A DNA stretch of 63,254 nucleotides, the filler included, from Octopus bimaculoides (taxonomy: Eukaryota), in NCBI RefSeq assembly GCF_001194135.2. It is 6 parts of 6 records of this genome, joined end to end, with 100 filler letters (N's around TTAATTAATTAA, not from the genome) between each part and the next. Parts side by side here need not be neighbours in the genome. Positions count along the whole stretch, not along the records: positions 48,062 to 56,223 come from NC_069006.1; 5 more parts are not named here. The stretch is one strand, 5' to 3'. Both the position numbers and the translations under genes were made by a program. Position 1 is the first letter of the stretch; every line of letters begins with the position of its first letter. The notes below the pieces were generated by a model. It was not told the origin of the DNA. It saw only the letters and a list, made by a program, of their open reading frames with translations, and did not search any database. Below, in pieces: positions 55,753-56,073 of this stretch.

Positions 55753-56073
55753 TTATTATTATTATTATTCAGGTCATTGCCTGGAATCGAACTCGGAATC
55801 TTGGGGTTAGTAGCCCGTGCTCTTAACCACTACACCACGGACATATGCTGTAGTGGTTAAGAGCGCGGGCTACTAACCCAAAGATTCCAAGTTCAATTCC
55901 AGGCTGTGACCTGAACAATAATAATAATAACATCGACAGATACCTTAGGAATGAGAACCCAGGTTCGAAATTTCCCCAAGACACCTGATGAAGGCTGGAG
56001 GGTATATCAGCTGAAACGTTGTGTTAACAACAAGCAAGATGAGGACAAATATCCGTCAAATGTAAATAATGTA
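55753..56073 (+). mobile_element. Composite element: tRNA-head palindrome + (AAT)n + hammerhead tail
   Basis: Palindrome 55768-55915, linker, TACCTTAGGAATGAGAACCCAGG, HHR at 55980-56025, and tail AAATGTAAATAATGTA. Confidence 0.85.
55980..56025 (+). ncRNA. Minimal type I hammerhead ribozyme motif
   Basis: GACAC-CTGATGA-A-GGCTG-gagggtatat-CAGCT-GAAACGTT-GTGTT. Confidence 0.72.

What the first reader, a model, noticed from the sequence alone, without database searches (positions are those of the whole stretch)
55753..56073. tRNA-headed, hammerhead-carrying non-coding retroelement (candidate cephalopod retrozyme or PLE-parasitic SINE)
Seen: a palindrome of two outward-facing tRNA-like heads (A box TGCTGTAGTGG, B box AAGTTCAATTCC), then (AAT)n, a conserved spacer, a canonical-core HHR (CTGATGA-A / GGCTG:CAGCT / GAAACGTT with GACAC:GTGTT stem I) and a tail. 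There is no TTTT on the + strand between the head and the HHR, so a Pol III transcript could read through it. The same modules recur separately at 54315-54620 and 54833-55068. Known: PLEs carry minimal, dimer-dependent type I HHRs with a palindromic stem III, and Schistosoma Sm-alpha repeats combine a tRNA-related unit with an HHR. Inference: this is a non-autonomous Pol III element that self-cleaves, may circularise, and borrows PLE reverse transcriptase.
Basis: partly seen in the sequence, partly recalled or inferred. Interest (0 to 1): 0.9.

Follow-up and report, generated by a model that had tools for sequence, protein, structure and literature searches.

The report
Octopus tRNA-headed SINE with hammerhead tail
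This stretch of octopus DNA is an old copy of a short mobile element that joins a tRNA-like promoter head to a tail carrying a Penelope-type minimal hammerhead ribozyme, and its insertion scars suggest it is copied by Penelope-like retrotransposon enzymes.

Summary
Window 55751-56073 holds an inverted pair of tRNA-like units (A) with outward (AAT)n tails, followed on the + strand by a ~145-nt unit (B). B carries a minimal hammerhead (55980-56025) that meets every published sequence criterion for Penelope-like-element (PLE) min-HHRs. A descriptor for that motif gave 0 hits in 2000 simulated pieces.

I first read A and B as two neighbouring elements, because each also occurs alone at 54320-55072. 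More copies changed that. In other octopod contigs (L009, L008, L005) and in one ORF (P0095), every B copy with an intact 5' end is preceded by an A-rich triplet run. A is visible in all three cases where the sequence reaches that far, always in the same order and orientation. The B-only copies are 5'-truncated.

B shows PLE insertion marks: an adjacent inverted 5'-truncated copy, an optional 28-nt tail, and a 16-bp target duplication. An abundant related family in an unidentified animal has the same plan (tRNA-like head plus a homologous HHR) and forms 129-nt tandem arrays.

Pol III transcription, cleavage, circles and the PLE partner remain untested. This copy has a weakened G10.1-U11.1 pair. 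I rate it a new variant of a known kind, of moderate interest.

The parts
55751..55838 (-). A2L: inverted copy of the tRNA-like unit. It lacks about 6 nt at its 5' end and has its own outer (ATT)n tail at 55751-55769.
   Evidence: Inverted repeat I8. The arm alignment shows it starting at GTGGTGTAGTGG. A box plus B box at 44 nt spacing.
55839..55914 (+). A2R: full-length tRNA-like head, from GGACATATGCTGTAGTGG to CCTGA. A box at 55848-55858, B box at 55890-55900.
   Evidence: The boxes each have 2 mismatches to consensus (criteria). No tRNA call.
55915..55928 (+). Internal A-rich triplet run (ACAATAATAATAAT) between the head and the B unit.
   Evidence: The same kind of run precedes B in L009, L008, L005, P0095 and P0007.
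55929..55979 (+). 5' part of the B unit: AACAT-CGACAG-ATACCTTAGGAATGAGAACCCAGGTTCGAAATTTCCCCAA.
   Evidence: Alignment of 8 octopod copies. AACAT..ATACCTTAGG is shared by B1R, B2, L009 and L005.
55980..56025 (+). Minimal type I hammerhead. Helix I: 55980-84 with 56021-25. CUGAUGA: 55985-91. Extra A: 55992. Helix II: 55993-98 with 56007-12. GAAA: 56013-16. CG: 56017-18. U16.1: 56019. U17: 56020. Predicted cut after 56020.
   Evidence: Descriptor hit, with 0 of 2000 simulations. Helices I and II appear in the MFE of the isolated segment. Helix II covaries across relatives. No Rfam hit.
56026..56073 (+). 3' part of the B unit: an AC-rich stretch and the terminal AAATAATGTA (short 3' end, without the 28-nt tail). 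An unrelated SINE starts at 56074.
   Evidence: The 9-mer AAATAATGT is present in 1-3 copies at the ends of different copies.
54320..54466 (-). B1L: inverted, 5'-truncated B copy. It carries the optional 28-nt tail (54320-54347) and a mutated HHR core (AAAGCATT).
   Evidence: I2. The same tail is encoded in O. bimaculoides A0A0L8FV75 and is present in L001 and L005.
54467..54619 (+). B1R: forward B copy starting at AACAT. Intact min-HHR at 54517-54562 with G10.1-C11.1. The 3' 9-mer is repeated 2.8 times.
54305..54319 (+). Left target-site duplication of the B1 pair (GTCTTCTCAACACAG). The right copy is at 54621-54636 (GTCTTCTCAAGCACAG). The insertion splits another SINE-like repeat.
   Evidence: score 11, P about 0.004 against random flanks of the piece. 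Sequence.
54833..55060 (.). A1: head-to-head pair of A units, joined without a spacer at unit position +1 (axis between 54936 and 54937), with outward (TTA)9 and (AAT)18 tails. Flanking repeats are AAAATACCACG (54822-54832) and AAAATACCCATG (55061-55072).
   Evidence: I4. Flank repeat P about 0.016.

Best explanation
Window 55839-56073 is a full-length but decaying copy of a composite, non-coding, SINE-like retroelement of octopods. Its parts, 5' to 3', are:
- a ~76-nt tRNA-like head (A) with A and B boxes at tRNA spacing;
- an internal A-rich triplet run;
- a ~145-nt body (B) holding a PLE-type minimal hammerhead, an AC-rich stretch and a terminal AAATAATGT repeat, with an optional 28-nt tail.

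Proposed mechanism (inferred unless marked otherwise):
1. The head drives Pol III transcription through the unit. No T4 run interrupts it (shown).
2. The 3' module mimics the junction region of a Penelope-like element, so PLE reverse transcriptase/GIY-YIG endonuclease acts on it in trans.
3. As shown for a lizard PLE in vitro (PMC11167929), both target strands are cut and both prime reverse transcription, at alternative start sites.
4. This gives copies with or without the tail, an inverted and usually 5'-truncated partner copy joined head to head, and 11-16-bp target duplications. These structures are shown here.
5. The inverted A-only arm at 55751-55838 and the A-only pair at 54833-55060 are best read as products primed at the internal (AAU)n run.

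The hammerhead has no helix III, so it can only act when two copies pair. In solitary copies such as this one it is probably inert and kept as part of the PLE-like recognition region.
For: Linkage of A and B:
- L009 starts with A's 3' end (CAGGCTGCGACCTGA, 14/15 identical to A2R), followed by a decayed (AAT)n and then B.
- P0095 is one ORF whose residues 4-28 match all four A arms (E 3e-5 to 4e-4) and whose residues 30-61 match all three B copies (E about 1e-9).
- L008, L005 and P0007 have a triplet run directly 5' of B.
- No copy has (AAT)n 3' of B.
- L008, L009 and P0095 share a GAT interruption of the run.

The HHR:
- It meets the min-HHR rules of PMC4209133.
- Helix II pair U-A/C-G/U-G is never unpaired in 18 copies.

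PLE marks:
- Inverted truncated partners in B1, A2 and L001.
- The 28-nt tail is present in 6 copies and absent in 4.
- A 16-bp TSD flanks B1.

An analogue elsewhere:
- In ENA ERZ21867824 and GCA_052426985.1, a ~330-nt unit with a tRNA-like 5' module contiguous with a homologous HHR occurs in 3 copies. It has short and long 3' ends, inverted partners and 129-nt tandem arrays.

Availability of a partner:
- Octopus genomes hold recently active Penelope families.
Against: - Only three copies show A and B together, and two of those show only part of A. I could not rule out that one of them is the same locus in another species.
- A also exists alone with its own flanking repeat (A1). The inverted arm A2L ends in (ATT)n rather than in B's 3' end, which needs the extra assumption of priming at the internal run.
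- No TSD could be checked for the A2-B2 unit, because an unrelated SINE follows it and the piece then ends (no TSD between A2's own flanks).
- A is not recognised as a tRNA by any tool.
- No octopus PLE sequence was available, so similarity between B and a PLE pLTR is unshown.
- The double-hammerhead fold is not favoured over two monomers by nearest-neighbour energies (-17.1 versus about -20 kcal/mol).
- Most octopod copies have broken cores.
- There is no significant excess conservation of the HHR among the three window copies. The longest invariant run is 30 nt; my own rough estimate, not a tool result, puts that at P about 0.2.
Confidence: 0.6

Rival explanations
1. A and B are two unrelated elements that are often neighbours. 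A is an independent tRNA-type SINE with (AAT)n tails. B is a solo, PLE-derived HHR unit or a severely 5'-truncated PLE end. PLE endonuclease prefers microsatellites, so B often lands beside A's tail.
For: A-only and B-only inverted pairs each have their own flanking repeats at 54305-55072. A2L has its own tail and no B. PLE insertion bias for microsatellites is documented. Most min-HHRs in animal genomes are solitary and are thought to be truncated PLEs.
Against: Order and orientation are the same in all three informative copies. B's conserved 5' end always abuts the run, and there is never a run 3' of B, as insertion inside a microsatellite would leave. The GAT interruption of the run is shared in L008, L009 and P0095. 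B1R, B2 and L009 all begin at the same AACAT..ATACCTTAGG point, with L005 diverged there, so these are not random truncation points.
Confidence: 0.2
2. The composites are recurrent one-off chimeras. When copying B RNA, the reverse transcriptase reaches its 5' end and jumps to the (AAU)n tail of an abundant A RNA. The A-B joins are then made anew at each insertion and are not inherited from a composite master.
For: The join always lies between a complete B 5' end and a complete A tail. Run length differs between copies: about 14 nt in the window, about 37 nt in L009. Template-switch chimeras are known for L1 (my own knowledge).
Against: The shared GAT interruption of the run in three copies points to common descent. 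The related family elsewhere has head and HHR body contiguous without any microsatellite in 3 copies, so inherited composites of this plan exist.
Confidence: 0.1
3. The hammerhead-like motif is fortuitous, and B is an ordinary foldback MITE or DNA transposon with no PLE link.
For: B1 and L001 are long hairpins that look like MITEs. No Rfam hammerhead model matches.
Against: The descriptor found nothing in 2000 simulations. The motif, with its extra A, ACGU and U17, is kept in 159 representative ORFs, and a search with the relative's ORF found 2727 further ORFs, from distant genomes. Helix II has a compensatory pair. Single-arm copies exist (B2, L005, L008, L009), which a TIR element could not make. 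A 16-bp TSD and the optional tail are marks of retro-insertion.
Confidence: 0.03

Closest known systems
Minimal hammerheads (min-HHR) of metazoan Penelope-like elements (Cervera & de la Pena 2014, PMC4209133)
   Same: CUGANGA and GAAA cores. An unpaired nucleotide between A9 and 10.1. A G10.1-C11.1 pair. No helix III, with a palindromic 15.2-16.2 (CG) that allows a dimeric helix III. Short helix I (5 bp) and long helix II (6 bp). Copies on opposite strands 100-700 bp apart. Mostly solitary copies.
   Different: Here the motif is not seen inside a PLE pseudo-LTR. It sits in a ~145-nt unit joined to a tRNA-like head. Cleavage was not tested.
Non-LTR retrozymes of animals (Cervera & de la Pena 2020, PMC7229834; Li et al. 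2026 preprint, 10.64898/2026.07.22.740005)
   Same: Short non-coding, HHR-bearing, non-autonomous units thought to depend on PLEs. 'Solo' monomers occur. The related family in L003 and L007 forms head-to-tail arrays.
   Different: Retrozymes are defined by tandem repeats of about 170-400 nt with canonical type I HHRs and circular RNAs. The octopod copies seen are solitary or inverted, carry a min-HHR, and have a Pol III-type head. The related arrays have a 129-nt period, shorter than the described range.
Sm-alpha / Sj-alpha SINE-like elements of Schistosoma (Ferbeyre 1998; Laha 2000; cited in PMC8490949 and PMC6155905)
   Same: A SINE-like, non-autonomous unit that carries a type I hammerhead.
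   Different: Sm-alpha has a full, fast-cleaving HHR with loop-loop contacts and a helix III, and forms satellite-like arrays. Here the HHR is minimal and there is an internal microsatellite and PLE-type ends. Sequence homology was not tested, and the original paper is not held.
Ordinary tRNA-derived SINEs (SINE2) with LINE-derived tails
   Same: Internal A and B boxes at tRNA spacing, a modular head-plus-tail build, simple-repeat ends, TSDs, and 5'-truncated copies.
   Different: The tail module carries marks of a PLE rather than a LINE. Insertions come with head-to-head inverted partner copies and an optional 28-nt terminal extension.

Membership tests
PLE-type minimal hammerhead (min-HHR) | Cores CUGANGA and GAAA in type I order, with helix I and helix II | tested here: met
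   Descriptor hits at 55980-56025 and 54517-54562 only, with 0 of 2000 simulations. Both helices appear in the MFE of the segment.
PLE-type minimal hammerhead (min-HHR) | One unpaired nucleotide between A9 and 10.1 | tested here: met
   A at 55992 and 54529. The column is kept (A in 17 of 18, T once) in the 18-copy alignment. The rule comes from PMC4209133.
PLE-type minimal hammerhead (min-HHR) | G10.1-C11.1 pair | tested here: met
   G-C in B1R and G-U in the finding's own copy B2. Across 18 copies: GC 10, GU 2, other 6.
PLE-type minimal hammerhead (min-HHR) | No helix III or loop 3, with palindromic 15.2-16.2 | tested here: met
   GAAA-CG-UU in both intact copies and in the ENA relatives.
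PLE-type minimal hammerhead (min-HHR) | Lies in the pseudo-LTR of a Penelope-like element | not testable with these tools
   No PLE ORF in the piece or beside any octopod copy. No octopus PLE sequence could be fetched.
PLE-type minimal hammerhead (min-HHR) | Self-cleavage as a dimer | not testable with these tools
   Only energies were computed. The double-hammerhead fold scores -17.1 / -21.3 kcal/mol, not better than two monomers.
Canonical type I hammerhead (Rfam Hammerhead_1 and relatives) | Match to the covariance model, including helix III | tested here: not met
   No hammerhead family at E<=1 in the piece, at E<=10 in 55900-56100, or at E<=1 in L003 9650-10450.
Non-LTR retrozyme | Head-to-tail tandem repeats, each with an HHR | tested here: not met
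   No tandem B in the window or in the octopod contigs. The feature is met only in the related family: L003 10030-10379, period 129, 2.7 copies, and L007.
Non-LTR retrozyme | Circular RNA intermediates | not testable with these tools
   No RNA data available.
tRNA-derived SINE (SINE2) | Internal Pol III A and B boxes at tRNA spacing | tested here: met
   A1R and A2L pass at 44 nt spacing, with chance expectation 0.03 per piece. A2R and A1L have more mismatches.
tRNA-derived SINE (SINE2) | Recognisable tRNA homology or cloverleaf | tested here: not met
   ARAGORN finds none. No Rfam tRNA at E<=10. No cloverleaf; z-scores 0.3-0.9.
tRNA-derived SINE (SINE2) | 3' module shared with the autonomous partner | not testable with these tools
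Only PLE-type marks could be assessed.
PLE-type insertion | Inverted 5'-truncated copy adjacent to the 5' end | tested here: met
   B1L/B1R, A2L/A2R, L001, and L003, L004 and L007 in the related family. The feature is described in PMC8557442.
PLE-type insertion | Optional 30-40-bp tail at one end | tested here: met
   A 28-nt tail is present in B1L, both L001 arms (P0009 is encoded on L001), L005 and P0001, and absent in B2, B1R, L008 and L009. The ENA relatives have a 35-nt tail. The feature is described in PMC11167929.
PLE-type insertion | Partial tandem (pseudo-LTR) arrangement | tested here: not met
   Not seen for the octopod copies. Seen in the related family only.
Sm-alpha-like SINE with hammerhead | Pol III-type head and HHR in one inherited unit | tested here: inconclusive
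   Head and HHR unit are contiguous in the window, L009 and P0095. Only three copies are available, and inheritance from a master is inferred from a shared GAT interruption.

The most novel reading that the evidence does not exclude
Octopods, and at least one other abundant invertebrate lineage, carry tRNA-headed SINEs whose tail is a Penelope-like junction module. These would be the first SINE families tied to PLE reverse transcriptase rather than to a LINE. Their odd genomic forms would all follow from PLE-style priming on both strands at three alternative start sites: the short end, the tail end, and the internal (AAU)n run. Those forms are head-to-head palindromes, head-only copies, and copies with or without the tail. 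The related 129-nt tandem arrays would be the smallest retrozymes and a source of very small circular RNAs.
Probability: 0.3. Interest if true: 0.7.

Novelty: new variant of a known kind. Interest (0 to 1): 0.5.

Why it matters
SINEs make up about 12% of the Octopus vulgaris genome, and nearly all of its recently active SINE families (893 of 900) are unclassified, with no known partner (PMC13282606). If some of them ride on Penelope-like elements, several things would follow:
- It would name a partner for part of the octopus-specific SINE expansion.
- It would extend the SINE-LINE rule to a third class of reverse transcriptase.
- It would supply natural substrates for studying how PLE enzymes choose start sites and make inverted copies.
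- It would give a reason for the very large numbers of solitary minimal hammerheads in animal genomes.

If the composite turns out to be mere neighbourhood, the finding reduces to one more PLE-type min-HHR copy, which is ordinary.

Tried and rejected
Steps that gave nothing:
- Rfam hammerhead and tRNA models and ARAGORN: no matches.
- Looking up window ORFs and P0001 in the contig index: not on record.
- Two metagenome scans with exact 21-30-mers of A and B.
- A word-indexed protein search with the ORF spanning the A-B junction.
- A full-text search for the sequences and for the sample accessions.
- Supplements of the two key PLE papers: not held.
- B homology upstream of A2: none.
- A TSD between A2's own flanks: none.

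Readings I held and then revised:
- 'Two separate elements side by side.' I held this until and gave it up as the best reading after L008, L009, L005 and P0095.
- Significant homology between the octopod head and the head of the ENA family. It is not significant (P about 0.09).
- Excess conservation of the HHR among the window copies. It is not significant.
- The RT ORF in L003 as a PLE. It has LINE-type motifs (FVDFSKAFD, YADD), not PLE motifs. That reading of the motifs is my own knowledge.
- Pfam support for the mariner-like ORF at 53425-53566: none.

Full report
**What is in the sequence**

The piece (48062-56223) is repeat-rich animal DNA. A translated copy of the unit studied here is 84% identical to an Octopus bimaculoides UniProt entry. 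Another copy forms the first exon of an O. bimaculoides dystrobrevin-beta gene model. The source is therefore an octopus.

Two short repeats matter, and both lie only within 54320-56073.

Unit A is about 76 nt (GGGCATATGGCGTAGTGG...CAGGCAGTGACCTGA) followed by (AAT)n.
- It occurs as two head-to-head inverted pairs: 54833-55060 and 55751-55928.
- In the first pair the arms meet without a spacer at unit position +1.
- In the second pair the left arm lacks about 6 nt at its 5' end.

Unit B is about 145 nt.
- It occurs as an inverted pair at 54320-54619 and as a single copy at 55929-56073.
- The single copy follows the right arm of the second A pair directly, on the same strand.

**Check of the observation**

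- A-box and B-box motifs at tRNA spacing (43-44 nt) are found in A arms and in the other SINE heads of the piece. Simulated sequence gives 0.03 per piece.
- No tool calls a tRNA or a cloverleaf, so 'tRNA-like' means promoter boxes and geometry.
- The hammerhead reads GACAC/CUGAUGA/A/GGCUGG..UCAGCU/GAAA/CG/UU|GUGUU.
- A descriptor written from the published rules for minimal hammerheads finds only the two forward B copies, and nothing in 2000 simulated pieces.
- Rfam's hammerhead models do not match. That is expected for a motif without helix III.
- There is no TTTT on the + strand from the head to the end of the piece.

**What kind of hammerhead**

Cervera and de la Pena (PMC4209133) defined the min-HHR of metazoan Penelope-like elements (PLEs). 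Its features, beyond the two cores, are:
- one nucleotide between A9 and 10.1;
- a G10.1-C11.1 pair;
- a palindromic 15.2-16.2 with no loop 3, so that two copies can build helix III together;
- a short helix I and a long helix II.

The copy at 54517-54562 meets all of these. The finding's own copy differs only by G10.1-U11.1, where a CpG has decayed to TpG. They also report pairs of min-HHRs on opposite strands 100-700 bp apart, as in the B pair.

On folding:
- The isolated segment folds into helices I and II.
- The double-hammerhead fold is feasible but not favoured by nearest-neighbour energies. This agrees with the weak in vitro activity reported for such motifs.

**PLE-type insertion marks**

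PLE insertions are 5'-truncated, often have an inverted 5'-truncated copy at their 5' end, and carry an optional 30-40-bp 'tail' (PMC8557442). Frangieh et al. (PMC11167929) showed in vitro that a PLE enzyme cuts and extends both strands and starts reverse transcription at two internal sites, which explains the tail.

The B pair shows these marks.
- It is a forward copy plus an inverted copy truncated at its 5' end.
- It is flanked by a 16-bp duplication of the repeat it split (54305-54319 and 54621-54636).
- The inverted arm alone carries 28 extra nucleotides (54320-54347).
- The same 28 nt are encoded in the O. bimaculoides entry and are present in both arms of L001 and in L005. They are absent from four other copies.
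- The terminal 9-mer AAATAATGT varies from one to three copies.

**Are head and hammerhead unit one element?**

At first I judged them separate.
- Each occurs alone with its own flanking repeat.
- The inverted arm A2L has its own tail and no B.
- Two protein-word searches, three contig look-ups and two metagenome scans gave no further copies.

A profile of the frame that happens to stay open through B, searched against 1.84 billion representatives, then gave 159 hits. These hits are translations of homologous repeats, and their contigs could be fetched.

Results for the octopod-like copies:
- L001/L002 are another B-only inverted pair.
- L009 begins with A's 3' end (CAGGCTGCGACCTGA), then a decayed (AAT)n, then TCAACATAAAAATACCTTAGG and the rest of B.
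- L008 begins inside an (AAT)n run, followed by B.
- L005 has a (CAA)n-type run followed by a diverged CAACATCAAAATCACC and the rest of B.
- P0095 is a single ORF. Its first part matches all four A arms and its second part matches all three B copies, with an AAT-run translation between them.

Taken together:
- Each of the six B copies whose 5' end can be read back (window B2, L009, L008, L005, and the ORFs P0095 and P0007) follows an A-rich triplet run.
- A is present in all three cases where the sequence reaches that far, always in the same order and orientation.
- No copy has a run 3' of B, as an insertion into a microsatellite would leave.
- L008, L009 and P0095 share a GAT interruption of the run, which suggests a common composite master.
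- The B-only pairs are then 5'-truncated copies.

I therefore now favour a true composite, with confidence about 0.6.

**A parallel family elsewhere**

Most of the 159 hits, and 2727 ORFs in a follow-up search, come from long contigs of ENA assembly ERZ21867824 and from NCBI GCA_052426985.1. I could not identify the organism.

A ~330-nt unit there has this plan:
- a 5' module with A-box-like and B-box-like motifs, contiguous in three copies with about 125 nt of body (about 45 nt in L007, which has an internal deletion);
- a hammerhead homologous to B's (82% identity over 67 nt);
- short or long (+35 nt) 3' ends.

Inverted full copies lie next to head-to-tail arrays with a 129-nt period.

Across 18 copies from both groups, one helix II pair switches between U-A (9), C-G (7) and U-G (2) and is never unpaired. 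Helix II is paired in 89% of cells and helix I in 66%. This is modest support, and it may rest on a single evolutionary event.

**Mechanism proposed**

Shown:
- the parts and their order;
- the lack of T4 runs;
- the min-HHR features;
- the insertion marks;
- the recurrence of the junction.

Inferred:
- Pol III transcription from the head through B.
- Recognition of the B 3' module by a PLE RT-EN in trans.
- Priming on both strands at the short end, at the tail end, or at the internal (AAU)n run. The last would produce the head-only arm A2L and the head-only pair A1.
- The hammerhead is inactive in solitary RNAs and acts only where copies are tandem.

The right flank of A1 (ATAAAAATACC) equals the first 11 nt of B's conserved 5' region and also repeats A1's left flank. 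That would fit priming by microhomology inside a composite RNA, but it may be chance.

**What remains open**

- Only three composite copies were seen.
- No TSD could be read for the A2-B2 unit, because an unrelated SINE starts at 56074 and the piece ends at 56223.
- No octopus PLE sequence was at hand.
- There are no RNA or cleavage data.
- Most octopod copies have broken cores, as expected of old insertions. Arm-to-arm identity is 85-89% within the pairs.

**Comparison with what is known, and novelty**

- The hammerhead itself is an ordinary member of the PLE min-HHR class.
- Non-LTR retrozymes (PMC7229834; preprint 10.64898/2026.07.22.740005) are the nearest functional class. Their defining tandem arrangement is not met in octopus.
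- Sm-alpha of Schistosoma is the nearest precedent for a SINE-like unit with a hammerhead, but it has a full, fast ribozyme.
- I found no description of a tRNA-headed SINE whose tail carries PLE marks. My literature search was limited to the held library.
- I rate this a new variant of a known kind, with interest 0.5.

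Noticed in passing
window 53123-53679: A long palindromic MITE-like element (arms 53123-53339 and 53461-53679, 93-96% complementary). Its inner part reads ...WLKEQSTDFYGAGIHALIRRWNIAIERNGDYFEK*, which looks like the C-terminus of a mariner-type transposase. That identification is from memory; Pfam gave no match.
   Followed up: partly
window 48062-48430, 49660-50020, 56074-56223: Three copies of another tRNA-type SINE (starting GGCGCAGGAGTGGCTGTGTGGTAAG...) with box motifs at 43 nt spacing. 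The third copy abuts the 3' end of the hammerhead unit and hides its downstream flank.
   Followed up: partly
window 52310-52750; 53868-54304 plus 54620-54790; 55290-55545 (inverted): A further SINE-like repeat with internal 42-70-nt tandem units and a (GAT)n-type tail. The B pair inserted into one copy and duplicated 16 bp of it.
   Followed up: partly
window 51780-52300: A degenerate CCCTAA/CCTAA-like array (family D2), that is, an interstitial telomere-like repeat. It lies next to CT-rich (50480-51060) and CCA/CAC-rich (51060-51780) low-complexity tracts.
   Followed up: no
P0020 = XP_052825882.1, O. bimaculoides GCA_001194135.2: A copy of the B unit (from the hammerhead onward) is annotated as the first coding exon of dystrobrevin beta isoform X1. 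This may be exonisation, or an annotation artefact.
   Followed up: no
L003 10030-10379; L007 296-690 (ENA ERZ21867824; NCBI GCA_052426985.1): Head-to-tail arrays of a 129-nt unit, each unit with a homologous minimal hammerhead (98% matches between units in L003), next to an inverted full-length copy that has a tRNA-like 5' module. The family is very abundant (2727 ORF hits). The organism was not identified.
   Followed up: partly
window 55060-55072 versus 54822-54832 and B's 5' end: The right flank of the head-only pair A1 (ATAAAAATACC) is both a repeat of its left flank and identical to the first 11 nt of B's conserved 5' region. This is either chance or a trace of microhomology priming inside a composite RNA.
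   Followed up: no
window 54408-54549, 54841-55032, 53343-53463: Rfam 'microRNA precursor' matches (plant MIR families, all far below gathering scores) are simply the long hairpins of the three palindromic repeats.
   Followed up: yes
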